Of a stretch of DNA of 64,000 bases, positions 36,336 through 60,472 are shown in pieces. How positions within the stretch are numbered: the first letter of the stretch is position 1; each line of letters begins with the position of its first letter. The stretch comes from Macrostomum hystrix (Eukaryota; Animalia; Platyhelminthes). Position numbers and translations under genes: made by a program. The notes beneath the pieces are model-generated. The model made no database searches. It was given only the letters and a program-made list of their open reading frames with translations, and was not told the origin of the DNA. The DNA is taken from NCBI GenBank assembly GCA_950097015.1, contig CATNEN010000005.1:5456001-5520000 (forward strand). The letters are read 5' to 3'.

Positions 36336-39300
36336 TCACATCTCGGGAAGACAGCGCGGGCCTGGTAAAGCAGAGCTTGAGCAATTCTGTGAATCCTCTT
36401 CAGCAACAGCAAACAGGTGTTGTTGCTGCTGCTGCTGCTTGTCATGAATATCCGCTTTCTCAACATTTTCAATCGACTCTGTTCTACAGGACTCAGATTT
36501 AGCCTCCGCATCCTTATCTCTCTGTTTCTTCTTGTGCTTCCTTTTCTTTTTGCGATGTTTCTTTCGCCTGGCACGATGCTGCTGCGAATCGTCAGGCTTG
36601 CTGCTGCTGCTGCTGCTATTGCTGCCAGTGGCGGCGGTAAAGATGCTGTACTTGTTGCTGCGAGCGGTGCTCGAATGCCGCTTCCACGGGTGGTCCGAAC
36701 AGAAGCTGCGAATATTATAGTTTGTGACTAATATTGATTAGAATTTTTATAAACGTCTTTTGCGATTACCTACTCATCTACGAGTACCTACTAACAGTAG
36801 ATGAAGTGGAAGATAGAAAAAACTCACAGTATCTAGATTCAACTCACAGTATCTAGATTCAACTCACAGTATCTAGATTCAACTCACAGTATCTAGATTC
36901 AACTCACAGTATCTAGATTCAACTCACAGTATCTAGATTCAACTCACAGTATCTAGATTCAACTCACAGGTTGCTAGATTCAACTCACAGTATCTAGATT
37001 CAACTCACAGTATCTAGATTCAACTCACAGGTTGCTAGATTCAACTCACAGTATCTAGATTCAACTCACAGTATCTAGATTCAACTCACAGTATCTAGAT
37101 TCAACTCACAGTATCTAGATTCAACTCACAGTATCTAGATTCAACTCACAGTATCTAGATTCAACTCACAGTATCTAGATTCAACTCACAGTATCTAGAT
37201 TCAACTCACAGTATCTAGATTCAACTCACAGTATCTAGATTCAACTCACAGTATCTAGATTCAACTCACAGTATCTAGATTCAACTCACAGTATCTAGAT
37301 TCAACTCACAGTATCTAGATTCAACTCACAGTATCTAGATTCAACTCACAGTATCTAGATTCAACTCACAGTATCTAGATTCAACTCACAGTATCTAGAT
37401 TCAACTCACAGTATCTAGAATCAACTCACAGTATCTAGATTCAACTCACAGTATCTAGATTCAACTCACAGTATCTAGATTCAACTCACAGTATCTAGAT
37501 TCAACTCACAGTATCTAGATTCAACTCACAGTATCTAGATTCAACTCACAGTATCTAGATTCAACTCACAGTATCTAGATTCAACTCACAGTATCTAGAA
37601 TCAACTCACAGTATCTAGATTCAACCCACAGGTTGCTAGATTCAACCCACAGGTTGCTAGATTCAACCCACAGGTTGCTAGATTCAACTCACAGTATCTA
37701 GATTCAATTCACAGTATCTAGATTCAACTCACAGTATCTAGATTCAACTCACAGTATCTAGAATCAACTCACAGTATCTAGATTCAACCCACAGGTTGCT
37801 AGTTGCTAGTTGAGTTTAGCGGTTTCACAAAGGATGAAGATTATAAATGACAATTGAACTCTAATTGCAATGTCTTTTAACATCATTTTTAACATTGTCC
37901 CCTTTTCCATGAACCCGCTAAACCCCTTAAGTCACGACTTGCTGGTTCAACCGAGTTAAAAATAGTTTAAGTCGGGAAATAAAACTTTTTTCTAGCAAAT
38001 CTTGAAGCACGCAATGTCTTGGTTGACTCAAAGCATACGAGCTACATATAACAGCTAAGTACTCTTTTGAGTGTTAAGCATAGGCAATTAAATCGAATTA
38101 CAAATCAGAGTGTGTTAAGGAACCCATGAGCATGATTTGGACATTTTAAATAAAAACTAGAATAAAATACTTCGGGCGAGCTAATTGGAGTGTCACTTGA
38201 CTTGACTAAATCTCTCTGCACTGAGTTAGAAAATTATAAAGTTAAGAGAAGGCAAAAATGTATGATACTGAATTATTTAAACAGACAGGACTTCTGATAA
38301 GACCAAGATCATCAAGAGGCTAGATCTAGATCAACACGAGACTAGATCTAGATTATCAACAGATTAGATCTAGATCATCAAGAGGCTAGATCTAGATCAA
38401 CAAGAGACTAGATCTAGATTATCAACAGATTAGATCTAGAAAACCAAGAGACTAGATCTAGATCATCAAGAGACTAGATCTAGATCATCAAGAGACTAGA
38501 ACTAAATCAAAAAGAGACTAGATCTAAATCATGCAAAAGACTAGAACTAAATCAACAAGAGACTAGATCTAGATTATCAAGAGACTAGATCTAGATTATT
38601 AAGACACTAGATCTAGATAATCTAGGGTCTAGATGTAGATCAACAAGAGACTAGATCTAAATCATCAAGAGACTAGTTCTAGATCATCAAAAGACTAGAT
38701 CTAGATTATCAACATATTAGATCTAGAAAACCAAGAGACTAGATCTAGATCATCAAGAGACTAGATCTAGATCATGCAAAAGACTAGAACTAAATCAACA
38801 AGATAATCTAGATCTAGATTATCAAGTGACTAGATCTAGATTATTAAGACACTAGATCTAGATAATCTAGGGTCTAGATGTAGATCAACAAGAGACTAGA
38901 TCTAAATCATCAAGAGACTAGTTCTAGATCATCAAGAGACTAGATCTAGATCATCTAGGGACTAGATCTAGATTATCAACAGATTAGATCTAGATTATCA
39001 AGAGACTAGATCTAGATCAACAAGAGACTAGATCTAGATCATGAAGAGATTATTTCACTGAAGAATCACAAAGAAACTAGATTATCAGGGATACAAACTC
39101 AGATAGTTAAGTAACAAGGGTAAAACTTTTCAAACCATCGTTAAAATTTATCAGCCGAGAATGACAAACACATCTCTCTGTACCACTCTCTACTCCCTTA
39201 ATTTAGCAGGTAAATGTGTAGTTTTTTGCTAGTTAAAATAAAATTGCCTTGCAACTAGCCATTAGCCAACGAAAATTATTCTTCTGGTAGATCTAGAGGC

Positions 39301-42300
39301 ATGTGATTCTAATAGCTCGTAGAACTGGACACAAAACATTTTATAAACAGATGATTAATGAGCCACTTGTTATCAGCTCAGCCCACTCAAAACAGGATAA
39401 AATTTTAGCAGGAATCCTTAAAAAAACTGGAAAACATTGCTGAAAATAGGACTAGATAAAATATTGGTTTTCCAATGTCTACACACTGTAGACTTAAGTA
39501 GATCAATGTATACTCGTTAGATCATCCAAATTGATTAATTAAAATCGAACAGGTGTCAATCATGTCATACATTTTTGTAGAAAAAATTATATCGTAATGT
39601 TAATTGTTTGCACAAGCCTACATAACATACAAATCCTTACTTACACCTGCCATATAGTCACAGCTTTCATATGCATTTAACTTATGCTATATCTAACAGC
39701 TTTCTTTCATATCAAATCCTTATCGAATCTAACACCTACAATATCTAACACCTAAAAAATATAACACCTAAAATGACTGACACCTAGAATATCTAACACC
39801 TAGAAAAAATAACACCAAGAATATCTAACACCTAGAATATCTAACACCTACAATAACTGAATCTACAATATCTAACACCTAGATTATCTAAAAACCTACA
39901 ATATCTAACACCTACAATATCTAACACCTACAATATCTAACACCTAAAATAACTGACACCTAGAATATCTAACACCTACAATATCTAACGCCTACAATAT
40001 CTAACGCCTAAAATATCTAACACCTAGAATATCCAACACGTTCCATATCTGACACCTACAATATCTAACACCTTCCATATCTGACACCTACAATATCTAA
40101 CACCTTCCATATCTGACACCTACAATATCTAACACCTTCCATATCTGACACCTACAATATCTAACACCTTCCATATCTGACACCTACAATATCTAACACC
40201 TCTGACACACCTATCAGACGTAAATTTTCAATCTTATCTAACCTATATAAAGAATTTGTGTCATGTCATCTCACCTCTTGCAGATTCCTTGAAGCCAGGT
40301 GTCAATAGAACAGAAATGATGCACCTGCGAGTGATAGCTGGTTGAAACAAATCTGTAGGAGTCAAATATTTGCACTTTGCCCTTCTGCCAGCGGGCGCCA
40401 ATCGTTTTCGGGCCATCGCCGAGCCACACCTCCACGTGCACCATGTTGTGCTTCTGCTTCTTGGCTGCCAAATGCAATTTCAATACAATATGAATTGCTC
40501 TGCTTTTCTGTTATTCCGAATCTACTAACAAAACTACCACACAGTCTACTCCGAAGCTTACTTCTAAATATATCCCTCATTCTACTCCTAAACTATCAGT
40601 ATACTCCGAAATCTACCCTGCCGTTTACTTCAAAATCTACACTGCCGTTTACTTCAAAATCTACACTGCCGTTTACTCCTAATCGACCCATCGACTCCTA
40701 AAGCCTAAAAGCCTCTACCCGGAAGCCTACTCCTAAATTTACCCTGAAGCCTACTCCTAAATTTAACCTGAAGCCTACTCCTAAATTTACCCTGAAGCCT
40801 ACTCCTAAATTTACCCTGAAGCCTACTCCTAAATTTAACCTGAAGCCTACTCCTAAATTTACCCTGAAGCCTACTCCTAAATTTACCCTGAAGCCTACTC
40901 CTAAATTTACCCTGAAGCCTACTCCTAAATCTACCCTGAAGCCTACTCCTAAATCTACCCTGAAGCCTACTCCTAAATTTACCCTGAAGCCTACTCCTAA
41001 ATTTACCCTGAAGCCTACTCCTAAATCTACCCTGAAGCCTACTCCTAAATTTACCCTGAAGCCTACTCCTAAATTTACCCTGAAGCCAACTCCTAAATTT
41101 ACCCTGAAGCCTACTCCTAAATTTACCCTGAAGCCAACTCCTAAATTTACCCTGAAGCCTACTCCTAAATTTTACCTGAAGCCTACTCCTAAATTTACCC
41201 TGAAGCCTACTCCTAAATTTACCCTGAAGCCTACTCCTAAATTTACCCTGAAGCCTACTCCTAAATTTACCCTGAAGCCTACTCCTAAATTTACCCTGAA
41301 GCCTACTCCTAAATTTACCCTGAAGCCTACTCCTAAATTTACCCTGAAGCCTACTCCTAAATCTACCCTGAAGCCTACTCCTAAATTTACCCTGAAGCCT
41401 ACTCCTAAATCTACCCTGAAGCCTACTCCTAAATCTAACCTGAAGCCTACTCCTAAATTTAACCTGAAGCCTACTCCTAAATCTACCCTGAAGCCTACTC
41501 CTAAATCTAACCTCACAGTCTACTCCTAAATCTAACCCCACAGTCTACTCCTGTGAAGTTAAGACTCTACCCCACAGTCTACTCCTAAATCTACTATCTG
41601 TATATCTTAAATTGTGTATTGTCTCATAGCAACCCACCAGTATCCGAGTAGTAGATAGCCTCGATGAACACAAGATCACCCGGCTGCATCTGATCTTCGG
41701 CAATCCTAATCGGCAGAGTGTCGAACATGTACGCCTGATTCCAGGGACCAATTTTGAAGCCGAAATCTTTGCGCAGATCGTACAGTACTCGGCGAACTAG
41801 CCCGCAACAGTCGAGAAATAGAGGCGAGTTGTACTCCGGATCTGTGGATTGTTTGGTGCGGGCGGTAAGAAATCTCAGAAATTTGGAAATTTTAAAAGTT
41901 TCGGAGAAAACAAAGATTCAGAAATCTAAAAGTTTCCGAGAAAACAAAGATTCAGAAATCTAAAAGTTTCCGAGAAAACAAAGATTCAGAAATCTAAAAG
42001 TTTCCTGAGAAAACAAAGATTCAGAAATCTAAAAGTTTCGGAGAAAACAAAGATTCAGAAATCTAAAAGTTTCGGAGAAACCAAAGATTCAGAAATCTAA
42101 AAGTTTCGGAGAAAACAATGATTCAGAAATGTAAAAGTTACCGAGAAAACAAAGATTAGAAATCTAAAAGTTTCCGAGAAAACAAAGATTTAGAAATCTA
42201 AAAGTTTCGGAGAAACCAAAGATTCAGAAATCTAAAAGTTTCGGAGAAAACAATGATTCAGAAATGTAAAAGTTATGGAGAAAACAAAGATTAGAAATCT

Positions 42301-45300
42301 AAAAGTTTCCGAGAAAACAAAGATTTAGAAATCTAAAAGTTTCCGAGAAAACAAAGATTCAGAAATCTAAAAGTTTCCGAGAAAACAAAGATTCAGAAAT
42401 CTAAAAGTTTCGGAGAAAACAAAGATTCAGAAATCTAAAAGTTTCAGAGAAAACAAAGATTCAGAAATCTAAAATTTTCGGAGAAAACAATGATTCAGAA
42501 ATCTAAAAGTTTCGGAGAAAACAAAGATTCAGAAATCTACAATTTTCGGAGAAAACAATGATTCAGAAATCTAAAAGTTTCGGAGAAAACAAAGATTCAG
42601 AAATCTAAAAGTTTCTGAAAAATCTAACACTCGGAAATCTAAGTGTCGGAAAAAGGCAGATTTCGAAATTCACAAGTTTAGGAAATCTCATTGTCTAGGA
42701 AATCTCAAATTTTAGGAAATCTCAAAGATTAGGAAATCTAAAAATTTCCGTTTTTTTAAGGTTACAATTTTTTCTAAGTTTTGGAAATCTCAAAGTTTAG
42801 GGAATGTGAAAGATTTTGAAATCTACAAGTTTAGGGAATCTCAAAGTTAAGGAAATCTGAAGGATTCTGAAATCTACAACTTCAGGGAATCTCAGAGTTT
42901 AGGGAATCTGAAAGATTTTGAAATCTACAAGTTTGGGGAATCTCAAAGTTCCGGAAGTACCAAAGACTAAGAAATCGAAGGCAAAGATTTAGAAATCACA
43001 AAAGTTTGATCAATGATGCTCGGAAATTCTCAAGGTCAAGCACCCGAGTTTGAGCTTGCTCAGGTTTTGGAAAATTTTCTAACCTAGGAAAATTGGAACA
43101 GCCACAGAAATTTTAGCTGGAAAAAAATTCTCTAAGCTTTCAAATCCTGTAAGAGAGTTCTTGGGACGAAAAACCGATATATTAATTTTCTGGCCTCCCC
43201 ATATTATGGAAAAATTGGCACAACTCCCAAAATACGTAGACAATGAGAACAAAAGTGAAGAACTGTACCTGAATTCTACCTGAAGCAGCTGTTGCCAAAT
43301 GGCCAAATTGGCAAACGACACAAATTTACTAAAGTTTTAAAGACATTTAAGTAAAACTTTTCTATAGTAATCTACCGGCGAAGTTAAATTTCAAGGTTAC
43401 AGTGCATGCAAGCTTTTGTAAATCTATTCTGATTGAATTTTGCCAGTCGTAAAACAATAATAGTTTTATAGGTATGGAACGAATTGATAAATAAATACAT
43501 TATAGGAAATTATACTAGGCTACTTTCGTTTCATAGAAAGAGGAAAGCGAAATTTATTTAGAAATAGGGCAGTAGGAAAAGAGAAGATTGGTGGTAAGAA
43601 TATGGAGAGAATGGATGAAAGAGGAAAAATAGGGAAGAGGGTAGATGGAAGAGAGAGGTGAAGAATGAAGAGAGAGGCGAGAGGGGAGAGGGAAAGACAG
43701 GAAGAAGAGGGAAGAGAGAGAGGCGAAAGGGAAGGGTGAGAGGGGATAGGGGAAGATAGAGGAGAAGAATGAAGAGAGAGAGAGAAGAATAATGAAGAGA
43801 AAGAGGAGAAGAGGGAAGAGAGAGAGGCGAAAGGGAAGGGAGAGAGGGGATAGGGGAAGATAGAGGAGAAGAATGAAGAGAGAGAGAAGAATAATGAAGA
43901 GAGAGAGGAGAAGAATGAAGAGAGAGAGGAGAATATGGAACAGAGAGAGGAGAAGAGGGAATAGAGAGATGAGAAGAGGGAAGAGAGAGGAGAAGAGGGA
44001 AGAGAGAGGAGAAGAATGAAGAGAGAGAGGAGAAGAATCAAGAGAGAGGAGAAGAATGAAGAGAGAGAGGAGAAGAATGAAGAGAGAGAGAATAATGAAG
44101 AGATAGAGAAGAATGAAGAGAGAGAGGAGAAGAATGAAGAGAAAGAGGAGAAGAGGGAAGAGAGAGAGAAGAAGAGGGAAGAGACAGGAGAAGAGGGAAG
44201 AGAGAGAGGAGAGGAGGGAAGAGAGAGAAGAGGGAAGAGAGAGAGGAGAAGAGGGAAGAGAGAGAAGAGGGAAGAGAGAGATAGAGGAGAAGAGGGAAGA
44301 GAGAGAGGAGAAGAGGGAAGAGAGAGAAGAGGGAAGAGAGAGAGGAGAAGAGGGAAGAGAGAGAAGAGGGAAGAGAGAGAAGAGGGAAGAGAGAGAGGAG
44401 AAGAGGGAAGAGAGAAAAGAGGGAAGAGAGAGAGGAGAAGAGGGAAGAGAGAGAAGAGGGAAGAGAGAGAGGAGAAGAGGGAAGAGAGAGAAGAGGGAAG
44501 AGAGAGAGGAGAAGAGGGAAGAGAGAGAAGAGGGAAGAGAGAGAGGAGAAGAGGGAAGAGAGAGAAGAGGGAAGAGAGAGAGGAGAGGAGGGAAGAGAGG
44601 AGAAGAGGGAAGAGAGAGAGAGGAGAAGAGAGAAGAGGAGGGTAGAGAGAAGAGATATATTACACATACAACTAGAGCAGTTTATTTGCAATCGGTATGA
44701 AATTTCATTCTAGTCAAAATCACTATAAGCAAAGACCTGTCTGTTTCTTTGCTCACTCAATCCTTTGACGTTTGTTCCCTATTGAAAATTTTTGCGCCCA
44801 GAGATTGTTGAAGTTCTTGCGCAAGTCTCACTTCAATGTGCCAGCTCAGTCATCAATGAGTATGTGTGAGTAGCACTTGAGTCAGCCATGGAATAAGTGG
44901 CTAAGTGACTGCATCAAGATGGAAGACTGCGCATAGAAAACAGCCCAGTTTACTCAATACGGTTGAAGTGTAAGAGTATGAGAGATGATTTGCAATTTTC
45001 TGTAGCGTTAAGTCAAGCTAATACCATTCAGTGTGCTAATACTATACCGAAGCCTAGGTAATGCTGGTACCTGAAGAATATGATCAATATTTGTTTTAGC
45101 CACTAAGCATATCTTACAGACTCTTTTGATTCTCAAGGCCTACACCATAATAGCTTTGGTTGCCTACTTCTCACTCTACCCTTCCTACTCTACCCATTCT
45201 TGTCTACTTCTCACTCTACCCTTCCTACTCTACCCATTCTTGTCTACTTCTCACTCTACCCTCCCTACTCTACCCATTCTTGTCTACTTCTCACTCTACC

Positions 45301-51300: not shown

Positions 51301-54300
51301 CCTGAAGAGTTAAGAAAACCTCAAGATATTCAGAAAACCTGAAGAATTAAGAAAACCTGAAGAATTAAGAAAACCTGAACAATTAAGAAAACCTGAATAA
51401 TTAAGAAAACCTGAAGAATTAAGAAAACCTGAAGAATTCAGAAAACCTGAAGAGTTAAGAAAACCTCAAGATATTCAGAAAACCTGAAGAATTAAGAAAA
51501 CCTGAAGAATTAAGAAAACCTGAATAATTAAGAAAACCTGAAGAATTAAGAAAACCTGAAGAATTCAGAAAACCTGAAGAGTTAAGAAAACCTCAAGATA
51601 TTCAGAAAACCTGAAGAATTAAGAAAACCTGAAGAATTAAGAAAACCTGAAGAATTAAGAAAACCTGAAGATATTCAGAAAACCTCCTGAAGAATTAAGA
51701 AAACCTGAAGAATTCAGAAAACCTGAAGAGTTAAGAAAACCTCAAGATATTCAGAAAACCTGAAGAATTAAGAAAACCTGAAGAATTAAGAAAACCTGAA
51801 GAATTAAGAAAACCTGAAGAATTAAGAAAACCTGAAGAATTCAGAAAACCTGAAGAGTTAAGAAAACCTCAAGATATTCAGAAAACCTGAAGAATTAAGA
51901 AAACCTGAAGAATTAAGAAAACCTGAAGAATTCAGAAAACCTGAAGAATTCGGAAAACCTGAATAATTCAGAAAACCTGAATAATTCAGAAAACCTGAAG
52001 AATTCAGAAAACCTGAAGAATTCAGAAAACCTGAAGAGTTAAGAAAACCTCAAGATATTCAGAAAACCTGAAGAATTCAGAAAACCTGAAGAGTTAAGAA
52101 AACCTCAAGATATTCAGAAAACCTGAAGAATTAAGAAAACCTGAAGAATTAAGAAAACCTGAATAATTAAGAAAACCTGAAGAATTCAGAAAACCTGAAG
52201 AATTCAGAAAACCTGAAGAATTAAGAAAACCTGAAGAATTCAGAAAACCTGAAGAATTCAGAAAACCTGAAGAGTTAAGAAAACCTCAAGATATTCAGAA
52301 AACCTGAAGAATTAAGAAAACCTGAAGAATTAAGAAAACCTAAAGAATTCGGAAAACCTGAAGAATTAAGAAAACCTGAAGAATTCAGAAAACCTGAAGA
52401 ATTCAGAAAACCTGAAGAGTTAAGAAAACCTCAAGATATTCAGAAAACCTGAAGAATTAAGAAAACCTGAAGAATTAAGAAAACCTGAATAATTAAGAAA
52501 ACCTGAAGAATTCAGAAAACCTGAAGAATTCAGAAAACCTGAAGAATTCAGAAAACCTGAAGAATTAAGAAAACCTGAAGAATTCAGAAAACCTGAAGAA
52601 TTCAGAAAACCTGAAGAGTTAAGAAAACCTCAAGATATTCAGAAAACCTGAAGAATTAAGAAAACCTGAAGAATTAAGAAAACCTAAAGAAGTAAGAAAA
52701 CCTGAACAGTTAAAAAAACCTGAAGAATTCAGAAAACCTGAAGAATTCGGAAAACCTGAATAATTCAGAAAACCTGAATAATTCAGAAAACCTGAAGAAT
52801 TCAGAAAGCCTGAATAATTCAGAAAACCTGAACAATTAAGAAAACCTGAATAATTAAGAAAACCTGAACAATTAAGAAAACCTGAATAATTAAGAAAACC
52901 TGAAGAATTCAGAAAGCCTGAAGAATTCAGAAAACCTGAATAATTCAGAAAACCTGAAGAATTCAGAAAACGAAAGCTTGCACTCACCAGCCTCAGTCCA
53001 ATATTTTCGTTTGTAAGGCACCCCGAAATAGTGCCGACATCTGTCTAGAAATTTCATCCTTAGCGACCAGAGTCGATCAGGATCCACGGAGCGAGACAAC
53101 TGCTGGCGCTTGGCTGCACGCTTTTCCCGCTTCAGATCTCTCTGTTTTAACAAAAAAAGTGGTTTTTGAGAACTGAAAGAATAACAACTCTCAAAACAGA
53201 ACTTTCTGTATAGCTACATACATTACCTGTTAGACAGAACTCCCATAACCTGTTAGACAGAACTCTCCTAACCTGTTAGACAGAACTCTCCTAACCTGTT
53301 AGACAGAACTCTCCTAACCTGTTAGACAGAACTCCCCTAATCTGTTAGACAGAACTCTCCTAACCTGTTAGACAGAACTCCCATAACTTGTTAGACAGAA
53401 CTCCCATAACCTGTTAGACAGAACTCCCATAACCTGTTAGACAGAACTCCCATAACCTGTTAGACAGAACTCCCATAACCTGTTAGACAGAACTCCCATA
53501 ACCTGTTAGACAGAACTCCCCTAATCTGTTAGACAGAACTCCCATAACCTGTTAGACAGAACTCTTCTAACCTGTTAGACAGAACTCTTCTAACCTGTTA
53601 GACAGAACTCTCCTAACCTGTTAGACAGAACTCTCCTAACCTGTTAGACAGAAACTCTTCTAACCTGTTAGACAGAACTCTCCTAAACTGTTTGACAGAA
53701 CTCTTCTAACCTGTTAGATAGAACTCTGCTAAACCTGTTAGACAGAACTCTTCTAACCTGTTAGACAGAACTCTCCTAACCTGTTAGACAGAAACTCTTC
53801 TAACCTGTTAGACAGAACTCTCCTAACCTCTGAGACAGAACTCTGCTAAACCTGTTAGACAGAACTCTCCTAACATGTTAGACAGAACTCTGCTAAACCT
53901 GTTAGACAGAACTCTCCTAACATGTTAGACAGAACTCTTCTAATCTAACCTGTTAGACAGAACTCTCCTAACCTGTTTGACAGAACTCTCCTAACCTGTT
54001 AGACAGAACTCTGCTAAACCTGTTAGACAGAACTCTTCTAACCTGTTAGACAGAACTCTTCTAACCTGTTAGACAGAACTCTCCTAACATGTTAGACAGA
54101 ACTCTGCTAAACCTGTTAGACAGAACTCTGCTAAACCTGTTAGACAGAACTCTTCTAACCTGTTAGACAGAACTCTTCTAACCTGTTAGATGTGATCCTA
54201 TACTTATTACACGAAAGGATATTTTACAAAAGAACAATAAAATGTCCAACGTTGCTTTGAAAAAAATAAAACAAAGACAATTATTTTTCAGATCAAACCA

Positions 54301-57300
54301 AGTGTAAGCTAGAAAAATTTAAATTAACAAAAACTCTACCATGGCGTCATTGAAACCGGTTGTTATCCACGTATTAGTGTCGATTTTCTAATAGTATGCT
54401 TAGGGAGCCATTTTGTTACATTTGAGCACTCCTTTACACACGAGTAAACTAATGGAAACAAAAAACATACTTCAAGGCTTACTAACAAAGCATTCTACTA
54501 CTACTCGTATTTGCTCCTATTTTTATATTCAACTAAACCCTACACTTAGTTTGTATTGATTGAAATTACCAATTTAATCATAAGCTATTGCGTTTGTGTG
54601 TGTGCGTGTCTAATAAAGCGAAAATGTATACGATCTGTCATACCATATTGTATTGTCTTTTGAATATAGCGTTGTTTACTAACACTCTGTTCAATGGCTG
54701 TTCAATGCTATTTTTCTAAGCTAGATGACAATTATAGATACGTTTATTATTATTATCATGGAGCAAATCTAACGATGCTTACGTAATTTTATTTATGACA
54801 TCTTTTAGGTTTGACGCAACCAGCATACATGATGGCTAGAAATTAACTATTTGCGGGTCGACATCACAGTGGGTGAGACTGAGTCAGGGTGGGTGAGGTG
54901 AGACGGAGGGAGGGTGAGACAGAGGGGTGAGACAGAGGGGTGAGACAGAGGATGAGACAGAGGGTGAGACAGAGGGTGAGACTGAGTCAGGGTGAGAATG
55001 AGTCAGGGTGAGACTGAGTCAGTGTGAGAGTGAGGGTGGGTGAGACAGAGGGTGGGTGAGACAGAGGTAGGGTGAGACAGAGGGAGGGTGAGACAGAGGG
55101 AGGGTGAGACAGAGGTAGGGTGAGACAGAGGGAGGGTGAGACAGAGGGAGGGTGAGACAGAGGGAGGGTGAGACAGAGGGGTGAGACTGAGGGAGAGGTG
55201 AGACAGGGGCGAGACGGAGGGAGTGTGAGACAGAGGGGTGAGACTGAGGGAGAGGTGAGACAGGGGCGAGACGGAGGGAGTGTGAGACAGAGGGGTGAGA
55301 CTGAGGGAGAGGTGAGACAGGGGTGGGACGGAGGGAGTGTGAGACAGAGGGGTGAGACTGAGGATGAGACAGAGGGTGAGACAGAGGGTGAGACTGAGTC
55401 AGGGTGAGAATGAGTCAGGGTGAGACTGAGTCAGTGTGAGAGTGAGGGTGGGTGAGACAGAGGGTGGGTGAGACAGAGGTAGGGTGAGACAGAGGGAGGG
55501 TGAGACAGAGGGAGGGTGAGACAGAGGTAGGGTGAGACAGAGGGAGGGTGAGACAGAGGGAGGGTGAGACAGAGGGGTGAGACTGAGGGAGAGGTGAGAC
55601 AGGGGCGAGACGGAGGGAGTGTGAGACAGAGGGGTGAGACTGAGGGAGAGGTGAGACAGGGGCGAGACGGAGGGAGTGTGAGACAGAGGGGTGAGACTGA
55701 GGGAGAGGTGAGACAGGGGTGGGACGGAGGGAGTGTGAGACAGAGGGGTGAGACAGAGGGTGAGACAGAGGGGTGAGACAGAGGGTGAGACAGAGGGGTG
55801 AGACAGAGGGTGAGACAGAGGGTGAGACAGAGGGGGTGAGACGGAGGGTGAGACAGAGGGTGAGACAAAGGGGTGAGACTGAGGGTGCGTAGAAAGAAAC
55901 GATGTGAGAATGAACATAAAGGATGAGGATGAGTGATGAAATGAGAACTAACTTTATGAAATAAGAACAACAAGGAAGTCTATTATAGAAGAAAAAGCAT
56001 GACTGGGGATTTTAAAGAAGCCACCTAAGAAAAATCGATAAAATCTGGGAAAAAATGGTAGGCATGAATAAAATAGAACTGCTGCAGTGAGAAATGCTGT
56101 GAGGGTAGATTGGCCTGTTTCTAAGAAAAGAGAGAGCTATGTAGCTCCGGTTACAAAATCTGTGTTGAGTAAAAGTCTAGCTTCTCTCTTATATTATTTT
56201 CTACAGAACTAGAAGAAACTCTTAAACGTATGACTAAGTATTGAATGGGCTGTAGACCAGGTCGCGAAAAAAACACAATAGGGGGAACGACTCCTGGTGC
56301 TGTAAGAATTTCCCAGCTCAACACGGCCCGGTCCTACTCAAGCCTGACTAGTCTGCCGAGGAAAAAACAATTGATTTTCACTCTCTTTAACACCAAATGG
56401 CTTACTGAGTCTCTAGTTTTGCATAATAGAAAAACTCCAAACCCTGGATTACTCAACTCCGCGAGAAATTTCTTTTAAAAGAGGGCTTAATCAACAGCTA
56501 AAAAGCTCCATCTAGAAAATAATAAATAATAATCAGACGGACAGACAATTCAAACTACCCAACTCAATTAGGTGTTTAGGCATTCATAAAGGATATTAAC
56601 TTTCAACTATAGCATCAATTTTTGTTGCTTTGTAGGTTAATGCAATACCAAAAGTCAAGCGGCTATGCAGTATGGATCGGTTTTATTTAATAGCTTTGTG
56701 TGCATCTCATCTGACCATGTATTGATCAGTTGCACATTGAATTTGATGTGTTGTGTACATATAACACACGTGGTACACAGGAGATTTAGTGGGGCCGGTA
56801 TTAGCTGCTGCGAAATCCTCTACTAGACATCATTACCTGACAGTATTAGATATTGTAGACAGAGCTATTGAAACACTCTCTCCAATATTGTCAGGCAAGA
56901 CGTCATAGGTTTGTTTTGTCATCAGAAACAAATTAGAGGATATATTAAAAGTGTCTTGAATTCGGAATAACAAAGTGAATTGCTTGAACAATTCTTACTT
57001 ACTTTAATTTTGATTTTGTAATGAGAAATTTTGTTAGGCTTATTGAGACCGAAGACTCAGCGACGGGAGAGACAGAGAGAAGGTGAGACAGACTGTGAGT
57101 GATGACAATTTATAAACACGACAATTCTTGCTTCGTGTTCGGAAGCCAAAAAACTATTGCCAACCACCCCACGGGGAGCATATGTGGGGTGGTTGCTAGC
57201 CAATGGTGCGACAGCTGGGCAGAGGAATTAGACAGGGCATTGTCAGACAATAGGGGGAGGTTACATTTTGGGACTTGGTATTTTTAATTGTACACTTACA

Positions 57301-60300
57301 ATTTCATCGCAGAGAATTGAGTCAGCAACCAATGCCTAAGCGACTCACTCCCACCCATAGATTATCTAGAAAGCATCTTGTGCATTCAACTCAACCAACT
57401 CAAGTGGAGAATATCTAGATTTAGAATGGAATAATTATGTGTTGCTTCTTTTTATATTATTTTTTTCTCCACGGCACCGTGTGTCTGTCTCTCTCGTTTG
57501 AATCTTTGTCTGACGATAAATAAGATTATATAAAAATATATCAAGCTGTGTTCTCGTTAGGTGTCGGTAACCAAGGCAACCGTTAAGACAATCGTTGTAA
57601 ATTGTAGAAAGGAGTGAAAAAAAGAGATTCTGTAATAATAGCTATTAATACTGAGTGTAACCCCAAACTATTTTTGTCTGGAACACTAGCTAATTTAAAG
57701 TCTTTTTCACTATTTTATTAGATGAGAGAGTGAGGTGAAAACGTCACGATTATTTGGTCACAATTGCACAGCAGACACGCACACACAGATTGCTCCAAGC
57801 AATAAACTTACCTATGTGGGCGGTTGGTTCATATTTCAATTCCAAACGATAGATTGACAAGATGATGACAATGGAAGAAAAAAATTAGCTAAAGCTAGCT
57901 AGCTGTGTGAAAACTTTGTGCTTTATTTCGCTTGAAGTTAAAGATTAAGTTAATAAGAAATAAAATGCTTCATTTTATTGTAGAGTTTAGAACACACTGA
58001 TTAAAATGAGTCATTAATTATGGGTCAGATGGTTCGCTTGTGGGTCAGGGGGTTCAAGTATGGGTGAAGGGATTTCATTATGAATCAGGGATTTGATTAT
58101 GGGTCAGGGATTTGATTATGGGTCAGGGGATTTGATTATTGGTCAGGGGATTCAATTGTGGGTCAGGGGATTCAATTGTGGGTCAGGGGATTCAATTGTG
58201 TGTCAGGGGATTCAATTGTGGGTCAGGGGATTCAATTGTGGTTCAGGGGATTCAATTGTGGGTCAGGGATTTGATTATGGGTCAGGGGATTTGATTATTG
58301 GTCAGGGGATTCAATTGTGGGTCAGGGCATTCAATTGTGGGTCAGGGGATTCAATTGTGGGTTAGGGGATTCAATTGTGGGTCAGGGGATTTAATTGTGG
58401 GTCAGGGGATTCAATTGTGGGTTAGGGGATTCAATTGTGGGTCAGGGGATTTAATTGTGGGTCAGGGGATTCAATTGTTGGTCAGGGGATTCAATTGTGG
58501 GTCAGGGGATTCAATTGTGGGTCAGAAGATTCAATTGTGTGTCAGGGGATTCAATTGTGGTTCAGGGGATTCAATTGTGGGTCAGGGGATTCAATTGTTG
58601 GTCAGGGGATTTAATTGTGGGTCAGGGGATTCAATTGTGGGTCAGGGGATTCAATTGTGGGTCAGGGGATTTGATTATTGGTCAGGGGATTCAATTGTGG
58701 GTCAGGGGATTCAATTGTGGGTCAGGGGATTCAATTGTGGGTCAGGGGATTCAATTGTGGGTCAGGGGATTCAATTGTGGGTCAGGGGATTCAATTGTGG
58801 GTCAGGGGATTCAATTGTGGGTCAGGGGATTCAATTGTTGGTCAGGGGATTCAATTGTGGGTCAGGGGATTCAATTGTGGGTCAGGGGATTCAATTGTGG
58901 GTCAGGGGATTCAATTGTGGGTCAGGGGATTTGATTATTGGTCAGGGGATTCAATTGTGGGTCAGGGAATTTCGTCATTTTGTTACTCGATAACTTGGAT
59001 CAAGGAATAAAAAAGCATCTAAAGCCACTTTAATCAGACAATGTTATACGAGTTTAAACACAGTCTTCGAATATTTTGTTTCGGGAAAGTGAGATAAAAC
59101 ACTGACAATTTTCTACTCTAAAAAGTGCACTTCTTTAATCAGGCTAGTGCAAATTTTTCGATTCTGTGAAATAACTCACGACTTAAATTCCTCCTACACT
59201 ACTACCAACGCTAAAATGAGTAAACACGGACGCAAAGGTATGTTCTTTTTGTGTATGAAAATAAATTCACTCTTCATCAAGAATACTGTAAGATGAAGAA
59301 TGACCTTAAATGCTAGATTATAGGTTGCTAAATCTGTGGAATGCGTTCACAATATGACCGAGGTAAGAATATGCCTTAAACAAGAATATGACCTAGACAA
59401 GAATATGACCTAGATAAGAATATGACATAGATAAGAGTATGACATACCGGGTGGCGGTACCACCCGGTAGATAAGAGTATGACATTGATAAGAGTATGAC
59501 ATAGATAAGAGTATGACATAGATAAGAATATGACCTAGATAAGAATATGACGTAGACAAGAATATGACGTAGACAAGAATATGATCTAGACAAGAATATG
59601 ACCAAGATAAGAAAATGACCAAGATAAGAAAATGACCTAGATAAGAATGTGACCTAGATAAGAATGTGACCTAGATAAGAATATGACGTAGATAAGAATA
59701 TGATCTAGATGACAATATGACATAGATAAGAGTATGACATAGATAAGAGTATGACATAGATAAGAGTATGACATAGATAAGAGTATGACATAGATAAGAG
59801 TATGACATAGATAAGAGTATGACATAGATAAGAGTATGACATAGATAAGAGTATGACATAGATAAGAGTATGACATAGATAAGAGTATGACATAGATAAG
59901 AGTATGACATAGATAAGAGTATGACATAGATAAGAGTATGACATAGATAAGAGTATGACATAGATAAGAGTATGACATAGATAAGAGTATGACATAGATA
60001 AGAATATAAAGGGAAGCAAGACCCTATCACATACCTTCTTCCTGCGCAGGTAAGTTTGAAACGATTTCTGCAGTGCAGACTTTGTCGACCCAGTCGATGA
60101 TGCAGTCATGCTGGAGGCAGACTCTGCAATCGCTGGCTGGCCATCGAGAGAAAACTTTGGCCCATCGCCAAAGTCAATGAAAAATGCAGCAGCATTGCTG
60201 TCGCCACCTGTTGAACCTGATGCTACTGTAGACAAATCCTCCTCATTGTCAGTTGTTGACGATGACGAAGAAATTGACTCGCTGTCATTAATTTCATCAA

Positions 60301-60472
60301 TTTCGCTATCCTCATTTCCAGATGCCGCTTCGCCAGTGCAATCTTGCTTGTCATCCTCCTGCTCGGTAACCTCTTCTTCGCTAAGGCCGTCAATGTCATC
60401 TTTAATGGCATGTTGCGCTGTTTCCGAATAAATAGTGGAGACCTTTGGGGGCAATGGCATTTTGATGGACAT
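36336..60472 (-). CDS. NlpC/P60-family (papain-like) cysteine hydrolase with acidic N-terminus and basic C-terminus, ~451 aa, 5 coding exons
   Basis: Exons 60472-60035, 53141-52988, 41841-41638, 40464-40275 and 36705-36336 join in phase (0,1,1,2; sum 1356 nt). Joined core: [13 protein letters not shown]...[14 protein letters not shown]...QPGDLVFIE...[21 protein letters not shown]...[15 protein letters not shown]. The frame stays open up to an acceptor at 60520, so a further 5' coding exon is possible. Confidence 0.85.
36821..37808. repeat. Intronic minisatellite, 20 bp unit AACTCACAGTATCTAGATTC
   Basis: About 49 highly homogeneous copies, with occasional GGTTGCTAGA variants. Confidence 0.99.
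38300..39050. repeat. Intronic minisatellite, ~22 bp unit AAGAGACTAGATCTAGATCATC
   Basis: About 33 diverged copies carrying the palindrome CTAGATCTAG. Confidence 0.95.
39725..40210. repeat. Intronic minisatellite, 16 bp unit TATCTAACACCTACAA (32 bp dimer at right end)
   Basis: About 30 copies ending ~60 nt from the donor at 40274. Confidence 0.95.
40605..41595. repeat. Intronic minisatellite, 24 bp unit TACTCCTAAATTTACCCTGAAGCC
   Basis: About 40 copies filling the intron between exons at 41638 and 40464. Confidence 0.98.
41872..42622. repeat. Intronic minisatellite, 34 bp unit GAAATCTAAAAGTTTCGGAGAAAACAAAGATTCA
   Basis: About 22 copies abutting the acceptor at 41842; followed by a degenerate related tract to ~43000. 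Confidence 0.96.
43590..44655. repeat. Polypurine (GA-rich) low-complexity/tandem tract
   Basis: AGAGGGAAGAGAGAGAGGAGA-type units; source of the E/R-rich and L/S-rich ORFs. Confidence 0.95.
45160..46975. repeat. Intronic minisatellite, 40 bp unit CTACTTCTCACTCTACCCTTCCTACTCTACCCATTCTTGT
   Basis: About 45 copies; rare variants recur at a 640 bp offset. Confidence 0.99.
47300..49535. repeat. Intronic minisatellite, 16 bp unit CTGGAATCTTCCTAAA
   Basis: About 140 diverged copies; a 176 bp higher-order block occurs three times at 49091, 49267 and 49443. Confidence 0.97.
50425..52972. repeat. Intronic minisatellite, 18 bp unit AGAAAACCTGAAGAATT(A/C)
   Basis: About 140 copies starting ~15 nt after the donor GTGAGT at 52987, with a periodic GAGTTAAG..CTCAAGATATTC variant. 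Confidence 0.98.
53225..54190. repeat. Intronic minisatellite, 23 bp unit CCTGTTAGACAGAACTCTCCTAA
   Basis: About 42 copies. Confidence 0.97.
54870..55885. repeat. Composite G-rich repeat (GGTGAGACAGAGG) with an internal ~412 bp duplication
   Basis: The marker GAGAATGAGTCAG occurs at 54994 and 55406 with matching flanks. Confidence 0.93.
58040..58968. repeat. Intronic minisatellite, 20 bp unit GGTCAGGGGATTCAATTGTG
   Basis: About 46 copies. Confidence 0.98.
59352..60008. repeat. Intronic minisatellite, 17 bp unit GACATAGATAAGAGTAT
   Basis: About 38 copies starting ~25 nt after the donor GTATGT at 60034. Confidence 0.98.
59445..59469. mobile_element. 21 bp palindromic insertion with TA target-site duplication (Tc1/mariner-type micro-MITE or remnant)
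   Basis: The unit GACATA|GATAAG is interrupted as GACA-TA-CCGGGTGG-CGGTA-CCACCCGG-TA-GATAAG: 8 bp perfect inverted repeats and a duplicated TA. Confidence 0.6.

What the first reader, a model, noticed from the sequence alone, without database searches (positions are those of the whole stretch)
36336..60472. Intron-containing animal NlpC/P60 cysteine hydrolase hidden across 24 kb of satellite-filled introns
The ORF track never shows this protein whole. Joining five exons by splice phase gives a continuous domain with the NlpC/P60 landmarks in bacterial (non-permuted) order: YFGVPY, DCCGLV (cf. DCSGLV, catalytic Cys), PGDLVF, and HVEVWLGDG (catalytic His). The usual third triad residue about 12 positions after the His is replaced by Gly (KTIGA), and a conserved-looking C..SFC..HPW tail follows. 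There is no signal peptide, and the domain is flanked by an Asp/Glu-rich N-terminus and a [13 protein letters not shown] basic tract, so it looks intracellular or nuclear. That argues against the peptidoglycan-hydrolase role known for bacterial and Trichomonas NlpC/P60s. The well-known animal members (LRAT/HRASLS) are circularly permuted, which this one is not. Its substrate is therefore open; a protein-side-chain amidase/deacylase (e.g. for tubulin polyglutamylation or glycylation) is one speculative idea.
Basis: partly seen in the sequence, partly recalled or inferred. Interest (0 to 1): 0.85.

Follow-up and report, generated by a model that had tools for sequence, protein, structure and literature searches.

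The report
Stand-alone TTLL10-type NlpC/P60 amidase gene
A real, spliced flatworm gene encodes a cysteine amidase whose relatives in most other animals form the front end of TTLL10, the enzyme that builds glycine chains on tubulin, which makes it a testable candidate for the still-unidentified enzyme that removes those chains.

Summary
Five minus-strand exons (60472-36336) join through canonical GT-AG sites into a 451-aa protein. A 1,511-nt contig from a public run carries the exon 3-4 and 4-5 junctions. The annotated Macrostomum lignano orthologue has the same five exons and the same neighbouring genes.

The core is a non-permuted NlpC/P60 domain. An AlphaFold model of a homologue has pLDDT 95.6 and matches about 40 NlpC/P60 structures at Z 11-13. 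Cys209 and His275 are invariant in 133 of 133 relatives. The canonical third triad position is Gly or Ala.

The new result concerns where else this domain occurs. In sponges, cnidarians, echinoderms, molluscs, annelids and several vertebrates (sturgeons, bichir, coelacanth, turtles, squamates), it is the N-terminal domain of the polyglycylase TTLL10. It lies N-terminal of the TTL domain in 89 of 89 fusions. In this flatworm, as in amphioxus and rotifers, it stands alone.

No paper in the library links TTLL with NlpC, and reviews up to 2026 say no deglycylase is known. My best reading is a cytosolic amidase that acts on TTLL10's products and trims or removes glycine (or glutamate) side chains. 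That function is inferred, not shown. This scan had not noted the gene before on other DNA.

The parts
60035..60472 (-). Exon 1: ATG at 60472-60470, aa 1-146. Asp/Glu/Ser-rich N-terminal region (net charge -18) with no hydrophobic signal-like stretch. Donor is AAG|GTATGT.
   Evidence: aligns to M. lignano P0178 residues 30-136
53142..60034 (-). Intron 1 (6,893 bp), largely minisatellite arrays with periods of 16, 17, 20 and 23 bp and larger
52988..53141 (-). Exon 2: basic helical segment ([15 protein letters not shown]) and the YFGVPY motif (53030-53013). Acceptor is CAG|AGA (phase 0); donor is GCTG|GTGAGT (phase 1).
   Evidence: tblastn with five fused homologues finds it
41842..52987 (-). 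Intron 2 (11,146 bp). Its arrays include an 18-bp unit (50393-52971), a 16-bp unit (47298-49532) and a 40-bp unit (45160-46972). The 40-bp array is about 70% identical to arrays in the same intron of M. lignano.
41638..41841 (-). Exon 3: LDCCG with the predicted nucleophile Cys209 (codon 41809-41807), invariant WNQAY, and PGDLVF
   Evidence: PF00877 E 2.2e-4 for this exon alone; Cys aligned to the DCSG cysteine of 3npf and 3pvq; 133/133 conserved; the 3' end of this exon forms the loose end of the spliced contig
40465..41637 (-). Intron 3 (1,173 bp), mostly a 24-bp array (40716-41531)
40275..40464 (-). Exon 4: HVEVWLG with the predicted catalytic His275 (codon 40438-40436) and invariant Glu277; TIGAR with Gly288 at the canonical third-residue position and invariant Arg290
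   Evidence: covered end to end with no mismatch by a 1,511-nt spliced contig
36706..40274 (-). Intron 4 (3,569 bp) with arrays of 20-, 22- and 16-bp units
36336..36705 (-). Exon 5: end of the family-specific C-terminal extension (C-x3-C-x2-H-x-W, aa 327-336), then a low-complexity tail with the basic tract [13 protein letters not shown] (36563-36525). Stop codon TGA at 36338-36336.
   Evidence: the start of this exon forms the other loose end of the spliced contig; the basic tract is also present in M. lignano P0178

Best explanation
Shown:
- This is a real, expressed five-exon gene of a Macrostomum-type flatworm.
- It encodes a 451-aa protein without a signal peptide. An acidic N-terminus and a basic, low-complexity C-terminus flank its core (about aa 150-340).
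- The core is a non-permuted NlpC/P60 papain-like domain with an invariant Cys209/His275 pair.
- The domain belongs to an old eukaryotic family that follows organismal phylogeny. In most lineages that family forms the N-terminal domain of the tubulin polyglycylase TTLL10. Here, as in amphioxus, rotifers, choanoflagellates and some ciliates, it is a separate protein.

Inferred:
- The strictly conserved catalytic pair indicates an active thiol amidase.
- The recurrent fixed-order fusion to TTLL10 suggests that it works on TTLL10's products, meaning glycine side chains attached to the gamma-carboxyl of glutamates in tubulin C-terminal tails (and possibly other TTLL10 substrates).
- The closest solved relatives are gamma-D-glutamyl-L-diamino-acid endopeptidases, which cut an amide at a glutamate gamma-carboxyl. 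That is the same chemistry as the glycylation branch point.
- The most likely mechanism is therefore attack by Cys209 on a Glu(gamma)-Gly or Gly-Gly amide, giving an acyl-enzyme that water then resolves. The protein would act as an eraser or editor of glycylation.
- The basic helix before the domain and the [13 protein letters not shown] tract may hold it on acidic tubulin tails.
For: Gene model:
- Canonical splice sites and one open frame.
- A spliced contig confirms junctions 3-4 and 4-5.
- End-to-end alignment to the M. lignano orthologue, with the same exons and synteny.

Fold and family:
- PF00877 matches 75 of 81 family members, best E 1.3e-8.
- A family profile hits only NlpC/P60 chains in the PDB. 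The best are gamma-D-Glu-L-diamino-acid endopeptidase-type DPP VI entries 3npf and 3pvq, E 2.7e-6 and 9e-6, with Cys and His in register.
- An AF2 model of the Branchiostoma homologue has pLDDT 95.6. All top 50 Foldseek hits are NlpC/P60. VIA-align gives Z 13.3-11 over 110-135 residues.

Active site: Cys209, His275, Glu277, Asn232, Gln233 and Tyr235 are 133/133 conserved, and Arg290 is 132/133. The window protein carries the family residue at all 46 columns that are at least 90% conserved.

Link to TTLL10:
- 16 of 25 long homologues have a TTL domain.
- 89 of 278 domain-bearing proteins have TTL, and the NlpC/P60 domain is N-terminal in all 89.
- Source names for the fused proteins include 'protein polyglycylase TTLL10(-like)' in sponges, cnidarians, echinoderms, Lingula and molluscs.
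- The TTL part of the Asterias fusion is about 45-55% identical to vertebrate TTLL10, E 1e-135 to 1e-145.
- The TTLL10 of sturgeons, bichir, coelacanth, turtles and squamates still carries the domain with the catalytic residues intact.
- Fused and stand-alone forms are interspersed in the domain tree. The window gene sits with M. lignano inside a supported metazoan clade.

Open niche:
[quoted passage not shown] PMC11244163 and PMC13425397 say the same.
- Frog TTLL10 residues 105-570, which lack the domain, are an active polyglycylase. The domain is therefore not needed for ligation, which fits an opposing or editing role.
Against: - There is no biochemical, localisation or genetic evidence for any member.
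- A fusion shows functional coupling, not the direction of the reaction.
- The canonical third triad residue is absent (Gly/Ala in 132/133), so the chemistry may differ from classical P60 hydrolases.
- Mammals, birds, frogs and teleosts appear to lack the domain. Mouse TTLL10 is known to be an active polyglycylase, so removal of glycines cannot depend on this domain everywhere.
- The TTL class of the protist fusions is not resolved: identity to vertebrate TTLL10 is 25-37%, and the PDB comparison does not discriminate.
- The core of the window protein is nearly neutral (pI 7.8), so the charge argument rests on the flanking segments.
- I could not read model coordinates, so the Cys-His distance was not measured.
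Confidence: 0.45

Rival explanations
1. The domain is coupled to TTLL10 but acts on glutamate rather than glycine. It would be a gamma-linked (branch-point) deglutamylase, or another tubulin-tail peptidase, that clears or prepares sites shared by glutamylation and glycylation.
For: The fusion evidence is the same as for the main reading. The closest solved relatives cut gamma-glutamyl amides. TTLL10 activity responds to tubulin glutamylation (title and text of 10.1101/2024.03.31.587457).
Against: Deglutamylases of the CCP and TMCP families already cover chain and branch-point removal (PMC11244163; PMC13425397). The fusion partner is the glycine elongase, not a glutamylase.
Confidence: 0.2
2. 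It acts on non-tubulin TTLL10 substrates or other nuclear or cytosolic proteins, for example removing glycyl or glutamyl modifications from acidic histone-chaperone-type proteins. In this reading the basic tract serves as a nuclear localisation signal.
For: [13 protein letters not shown] (aa 377-389) resembles a classical NLS, and a similar tract is kept in M. lignano and rotifer orthologues. From my own knowledge, not checked here: TTLL10 was reported to glycylate NAP1.
Against: The named members come from organisms with cilia or flagella, which points to axonemal biology. Basic tracts also bind tubulin tails. There is no localisation data.
Confidence: 0.12
3. It is a non-hydrolytic module: a transferase (an acyl-enzyme that passes glycyl or peptidyl groups on, as LRAT-type members do with acyl groups) or a tail-binding regulatory domain of TTLL10.
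For: The canonical third triad residue is missing, and a family-specific invariant set (Glu277, Arg290, Asn232, Gln233) surrounds the dyad. Other branches of the NlpC/P60 superfamily are acyltransferases (established knowledge).
Against: Cys209 and His275 are invariant in 133/133 members across about a billion years of divergence, which argues for catalysis rather than mere binding. The domain persists as an independent protein in many lineages. Ligation works without it.
Confidence: 0.12
4. It is a peptidoglycan hydrolase of bacterial origin used against bacteria, as in Trichomonas NlpC, tick Dae or mite enzymes.
For: All the best structural and profile matches are bacterial cell-wall endopeptidases and Trichomonas NlpC.
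Against: There is no signal peptide and no SH3b or LysM targeting domain. The gene has four spliceosomal introns that are conserved between species. The family is eukaryote-wide and tracks organismal phylogeny. It is fused to a cytosolic ATP-grasp ligase. The third triad residue is lost.
Confidence: 0.03

Closest known systems
N-terminal domain of TTLL10 / 'protein polyglycylase TTLL10-like' proteins of invertebrates and non-teleost fishes and reptiles (for example Asterias rubens P0162, Strongylocentrotus P0260, Latimeria P0275, Paroedura P0327)
   Same: It belongs to the same domain family. Identity to the window protein is 50-70% over about 200 residues, the invariant residues are the same, and the window gene nests among these proteins in the domain tree.
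   Different: The window protein has no TTL ATP-grasp domain. It carries an acidic N-terminus and a basic tail instead. The domain in these proteins is annotated only automatically, and I found no study of it.
Bacterial gamma-D-glutamyl-L-diamino-acid endopeptidases of the NlpC/P60 family (YkfC/DPP VI type: PDB 3npf, 3pvq, 4r0k, 3h41)
   Same: It shares the non-permuted papain-like fold, the Y-x-G-x-P-Y, D-C-x-G-L-V, G-D-L-V-F and H-V-x-I motifs in the same order, and the Cys and His in register.
   Different: It has no SH3b domains and no signal peptide. The third triad His is replaced by Gly. It has an extra N-terminal helical pair and a Cys/His-rich C-terminal extension. It is a eukaryotic cytosolic protein.
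Trichomonas vaginalis NlpC A1/A2 (PDB 6bim, 6biq)
   Same: These are eukaryotic NlpC/P60 proteins and the top structural match (Z 13.3 and 13.1).
   Different: By published knowledge, they are recent bacterial acquisitions that are secreted or surface-bound and degrade peptidoglycan. The family here is ancient, has introns, and is linked to TTLL10.
LRAT / PLAAT (HRASLS) / LRATD proteins, the familiar animal NlpC/P60 members
   Same: They belong to the same superfamily and use a Cys-His based thiol acyl-enzyme chemistry.
   Different: In those proteins the order is circularly permuted (His before Cys), they are membrane-anchored, and they act on lipids. Here Cys209 precedes His275 and there is no transmembrane segment.
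Tubulin-code erasers: CCP1-6 and TMCP deglutamylases, and vasohibin/SVBP detyrosinase
   Same: The proposed role is analogous: removing an amino-acid modification from tubulin tails. Vasohibin is also a papain-like thiol peptidase.
   Different: There is no homology to CCPs, which are M14 metallo-carboxypeptidases. Vasohibin belongs to the transglutaminase-like branch. None of these enzymes removes glycines.

Membership tests
NlpC/P60 superfamily, P60-like (non-permuted) branch | Papain-like alpha+beta fold with the nucleophile at the start of a helix and the His on a following beta-strand | tested here: met
   The AF2 model of homologue P0021:56-262 has pLDDT 95.6. The top 50 Foldseek hits are all NlpC/P60. 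VIA-align gives Z 13.3-11 with 110-135 residues aligned. The model is of a homologue 64% identical to the window protein, not of the window protein itself.
NlpC/P60 superfamily, P60-like (non-permuted) branch | Match to Pfam PF00877 at or above its gathering score (23 bits) | tested here: inconclusive
   Exon 3 alone scores 21.6 bits, E 2.2e-4. The tools would not accept the spliced protein by reference, so it was not scanned whole. 75 of 81 relatives match at E <= 0.01, best 1.3e-8. Some exceed 23 bits (P0045 scores 27.3), but most fall just below.
NlpC/P60 superfamily, P60-like (non-permuted) branch | Catalytic Cys in a D-C-x-G motif and catalytic His in an H-V-x-I/V motif, in the order Cys then His | tested here: met
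   Cys209 in LDCCG and His275 in HVEVW align to the DCSG and HVGIYLG motifs of 3npf and 3pvq. Both are 133/133 conserved.
NlpC/P60 superfamily, P60-like (non-permuted) branch | Third polar triad residue (usually His; Glu, Gln or Asn in some) on the strand after the His, about 12 residues downstream | tested here: not met
   That position is Gly288 in the window protein, and Gly (123) or Ala (9) in 132/133 relatives. Invariant Glu277 or another residue may substitute.
Peptidoglycan-hydrolase NlpC/P60 enzymes (functional class) | Secretion signal and/or cell-wall targeting modules (SH3b, LysM, and similar) | tested here: not met
   The exon pieces have no Pfam domain other than NLPC_P60. The N-terminus is acidic with no hydrophobic stretch. 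No signal-peptide predictor was run.
TTLL10 (polyglycylase) family | TTL-type ATP-grasp ligase domain (PF03133) | tested here: not met
   tblastn with five fused homologues against the whole 64-kb window finds only the NlpC/P60 exons. The gene ends at 36336 and the next gene is a thiolase. The window protein is homologous to TTLL10's accessory N-domain, not to TTLL10 itself.
LRAT / PLAAT family | Circularly permuted order (His before Cys) and a C-terminal membrane anchor | tested here: not met
   Cys209 precedes His275, and the C-terminus is hydrophilic and basic.

The most novel reading that the evidence does not exclude
This family is the missing eraser of tubulin glycylation. In this reading, ancestral TTLL10 was a writer-eraser fusion: an NlpC/P60 deglycylase joined to an ATP-grasp polyglycylase. 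Lineages such as flatworms, amphioxus and rotifers split it into two genes, and mammals, birds, frogs and teleosts lost the eraser half.
Probability: 0.3. Interest if true: 0.95.

Novelty: new variant of a known kind. Interest (0 to 1): 0.78.

Why it matters
Glycylation is the one major tubulin-tail modification with no known removing enzyme. Papers from 2024 to 2026 still say so. A thiol amidase with an invariant Cys-His pair that evolution has repeatedly fused to and split from the glycine-chain elongase TTLL10 is a concrete candidate. It can be expressed and tested with assays that already exist, such as TTLL8/TTLL10-glycylated microtubules read out by LC-MS.

The TTLL10 enzymes studied so far (human, mouse, frog) lack this domain, which may explain why the link is absent from the literature searched. 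Even if the substrate proves to be something else, the family is a distinct, ancient, intracellular eukaryotic branch of NlpC/P60 with a non-canonical active site.

Tried and rejected
Following the tool's advice I laid only the repeat-free stretch 40202-40715. Reads therefore did not test junctions 1-2 and 2-3.
- The look-up of sequencing runs returned a single run whose kind is not on record. The spliced contig shows that the joined form exists, but it gives no tissue or expression level.
- phmmer of single exons against PDB sequences was too weak to be useful. The family profile was needed.
- I tried to confirm the third-residue register by sequence against the PDB. Nothing was found.
- Model coordinates are not exposed, so Cys-His geometry and the role of Glu277 could not be measured.
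- The TTL class of protist fusions could not be settled. The PDB has no TTLL10, and the scores against TTLL3, TTLL6 and TTL are similar. Identity to vertebrate TTLL10 is 25-37%.
- The look-up of encoding contigs for Branchiostoma P0158 (meant to test adjacency to its TTLL10 gene) found nothing on record. For P0010 no DNA was served.
- Anantharaman & Aravind 2003 (PMC151301) is not held, so I could not check whether it mentions this eukaryotic group.
- The peptidoglycan-hydrolase, horizontal-transfer and LRAT-like readings were considered and rejected, as set out under rival explanations.
- The spliced protein was used only inside scripts. Tools that take references received exon pieces or homologues.
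Full report
**1. The observation**

Reading the minus strand around them gives five exons: 60472-60035, 53141-52988, 41841-41638, 40464-40275 and 36705-36336. All four introns start with GT and end with AG. The phases are 0, 1, 1 and 2.

The introns are 6,893, 11,146, 1,173 and 3,569 bp long. About 67% of them is made of at least 14 different tandem arrays. That is why the ORF list shows only exon fragments and long spurious repeat ORFs.

**2. Is the gene real?**

Three independent lines say yes.

- *Homologue alignment.* The spliced protein aligns over residues 130-354, without breaks at exon junctions, to full-length homologues at 50-66% identity with E values down to 1e-99. It also aligns end to end with an annotated Macrostomum lignano protein, P0178, at 61% overall, 86% in the domain and E 1e-179. 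That alignment includes the acidic N-terminus, the 1-2 junction (…YLRRKK|RDLKRE…) and the basic C-terminal tract.
- *Conserved structure and neighbours.* The M. lignano gene spans 21 kb and has the same five exons. Its introns are likewise full of minisatellites. It is followed by a thiolase gene and an SMP/C2 gene, the same neighbours as in the window. The window therefore comes from a Macrostomum-type flatworm. Exon DNA identity to M. lignano is 72-87%.
- *A spliced contig.* One public run holds a 1,511-nt contig that covers exactly 40275-40465 with no mismatch. Its overhangs are the first 30 bases of exon 5 on one side and the last 30 bases of exon 3 on the other. That confirms junctions 3-4 and 4-5. 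If the contig is in the sense orientation, exon 4 at contig positions 867-1057 fits a roughly 70-nt 5' UTR plus the 796 nt of exons 1-3. This is an inference.

**3. What the protein is**

*Sequence and profile matches.* Exon 3 alone matches Pfam NLPC_P60 at E 2.2e-4 and 21.6 bits, against a cut-off of 23. A phmmer search with exon 3 against 1.84 billion cluster representatives found 303 with E < 1e-10. Of 81 non-redundant domain sequences, 75 match PF00877, with a best E of 1.3e-8. A profile of the family finds only NlpC/P60 chains among PDB sequences. The best are the DPP VI / gamma-D-glutamyl-L-diamino-acid endopeptidase type (3npf at 2.7e-6, 3pvq at 9e-6), with Y-x-G-x-P-Y, D-C-x-G, G-D-L-V-F and the His strand in register.

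*Structure.* An AlphaFold2 model of the Branchiostoma homologue, built with the 81-sequence alignment, has mean pLDDT 95.6 and pTM 0.87. Its top 50 Foldseek matches are all NlpC/P60 domains. VIA-align gives Z 13.3-11 over 110-135 residues for about 40 of them.

*Active site.* The order is Cys then His, so the domain is not permuted. Across 133 full-length domains:
- Cys209, His275, Glu277, Asn232, Gln233 and Tyr235 are invariant.
- Arg290 is present in 132.
- The position where classical P60 enzymes carry the third triad residue is Gly (123) or Ala (9).

The window protein carries the family residue at all 46 columns that are at least 90% conserved.

*Other features.* A family-specific C-terminal extension carries H271/C327/C331/H334. 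A few members swap Cys and His at these positions, which hints at a structural zinc site, but this is untested. There is no hydrophobic N-terminal stretch and no other Pfam domain.

**4. The unexpected context**

*The fusion.* Long homologues carry a C-terminal tubulin-tyrosine-ligase-like domain (PF03133): 16 of 25 in a first set.

*Which ligase it is.* Source names for the fused proteins include 'protein polyglycylase TTLL10(-like)' in sponges (Oscarella, Dysidea), cnidarians (Hydractinia, Clytia), echinoderms, Lingula and molluscs. The ligase half of the Asterias protein is about 45-55% identical to vertebrate TTLL10, with E between 1e-135 and 1e-145, and every named hit is a TTLL10. For the Owenia fusion, the nearest solved structure is the glycylase TTLL3.

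*Distribution among vertebrates.* Of the 115 new TTLL10-type proteins from that search, 27 have the NlpC/P60 domain. They include sturgeons, bichir, coelacanth, turtles and squamates, and the catalytic residues are intact in all seven long TTL-fused members checked, including a turtle, a gecko and a rattlesnake. It is not seen in the frog, teleost, bird and mammal entries.

*Stand-alone forms.* These occur in Macrostomum, Branchiostoma, rotifers, choanoflagellates, heterotrich ciliates, Fabomonas and many protist transcriptomes. In a maximum-likelihood tree of the domain:
- The window gene is sister to M. lignano (SH-aLRT 96).
- That pair lies inside a metazoan clade (SH-aLRT 95).
- Fused and stand-alone forms are interspersed, and well-supported branches force at least five changes of architecture.

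This pattern points to old vertical inheritance with repeated fission or fusion, not a recent bacterial acquisition. The window itself has no TTL domain.

**5. Mechanism**

*Shown.* The protein has the NlpC/P60 fold with a strictly conserved Cys/His pair, and its family is evolutionarily coupled to TTLL10.

*Inferred.* It is an active thiol amidase that works on what TTLL10 makes, namely glycine chains attached through the gamma-carboxyl of tail glutamates. The nearest solved relatives hydrolyse an amide at a glutamate gamma-carboxyl, which is the same bond type as the glycylation branch point. Frog TTLL10 residues 105-570 lack this domain and are a fully active polyglycylase, so the domain is not part of the ligase reaction. 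That fits an opposing or editing activity.

*State of the field.* Current literature says that no enzyme processing glycine chains or branches is known. No paper in the 8.4-million-paper library contains both TTLL (or tubulin tyrosine ligase, TTLL10 or polyglycylase) and NlpC or papain-like.

*Confidence.* I put about 0.45 on 'hydrolase acting on glycyl (or closely related) side chains made by the TTLL3/8/10 system', and about 0.3 on the strict 'it is the deglycylase' reading.

**6. Rivals**

- A deglutamylase or other tail peptidase: 0.2.
- Non-tubulin or nuclear substrates, given the NLS-like [13 protein letters not shown]: 0.12.
- A transferase or regulatory module, given the missing third residue: 0.12.
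- A peptidoglycan hydrolase: 0.03. Against this reading: introns conserved between species, no signal peptide or targeting domains, eukaryote-wide vertical distribution, and fusion to a cytosolic ligase.

**7. Weaknesses**

- There is no experimental evidence for any member of the family.
- Model coordinates could not be inspected.
- The ligase class of the protist fusions is unresolved.
- Statements about absence in mammals, birds, frogs, teleosts, arthropods and nematodes rest on hit lists, not on exhaustive genome searches.
- The charge argument is weak. The median domain pI is 9.05, but the window core is 7.8.

**8. Verdict**

The gene is not an orphan. It is the stand-alone form of a conserved, uncharacterised domain that databases label only 'NlpC/P60 domain-containing' or bury inside 'TTLL10-like' entries. 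It is a new variant of a known kind. The interest is high because it makes a long-standing open question, what removes tubulin glycylation, directly testable.

Noticed in passing
window 10757-36336 compared with L001 (M. lignano NIVC01000188.1): Gene order is conserved with Macrostomum lignano: the NlpC/P60 gene, then a thiolase (window 32436-30650, minus strand), then an SMP/C2-domain gene (window about 28450-10757). Exon DNA is 72-87% identical, so the window comes from a related species or an old duplicate rather than the same sequence.
   Followed up: partly
window 45160-46972; L001 19829-20666 and 22682-23731: A 40-bp minisatellite in intron 2 is about 67-71% identical to 43- and 44-bp arrays in the corresponding intron of M. 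lignano. The other arrays in the two genes have different units. Either this array predates the split or it belongs to a dispersed repeat family.
   Followed up: partly
window 36706-60034: About 67% of the intron sequence is tandem arrays in at least 14 blocks (units of 16-40 bp, with higher-order periods up to about 400 bp). They generate long spurious ORFs, for example 45126-46388 (420 aa) and 40705-41541 (278 aa). The exon 1 ORF also reads on into an intron array down to 59705.
   Followed up: yes
spliced protein aa 271, 327, 331, 334 (window codons in exons 4 and 5): The family-specific C-terminal extension (SIDTWLxGxCxSxCxxHxW), together with His271, forms a conserved H/C/C/H set. A few relatives swap Cys and His at these positions. 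This may be a structural zinc site that staples the extension to the core.
   Followed up: partly
homologues P0262-P0264, P0267, P0293 and P0158 (Branchiostoma): In Branchiostoma lanceolatum, the stand-alone NlpC/P60 protein and a TTLL10-like protein are both reported from a contig of the same length (20,566,309 bp). They may be neighbouring genes or one split gene model. The look-up found no record, so this remains open.
   Followed up: partly
same genome, another piece (earlier finding s1-366075): An earlier first-stage note reports a TTLL-like protein lacking the ATP-grasp metal ligands elsewhere in this genome. If that is the TTLL10 orthologue, the writer half may be degenerate here while the NlpC/P60 half is conserved. 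I did not check this.
   Followed up: no
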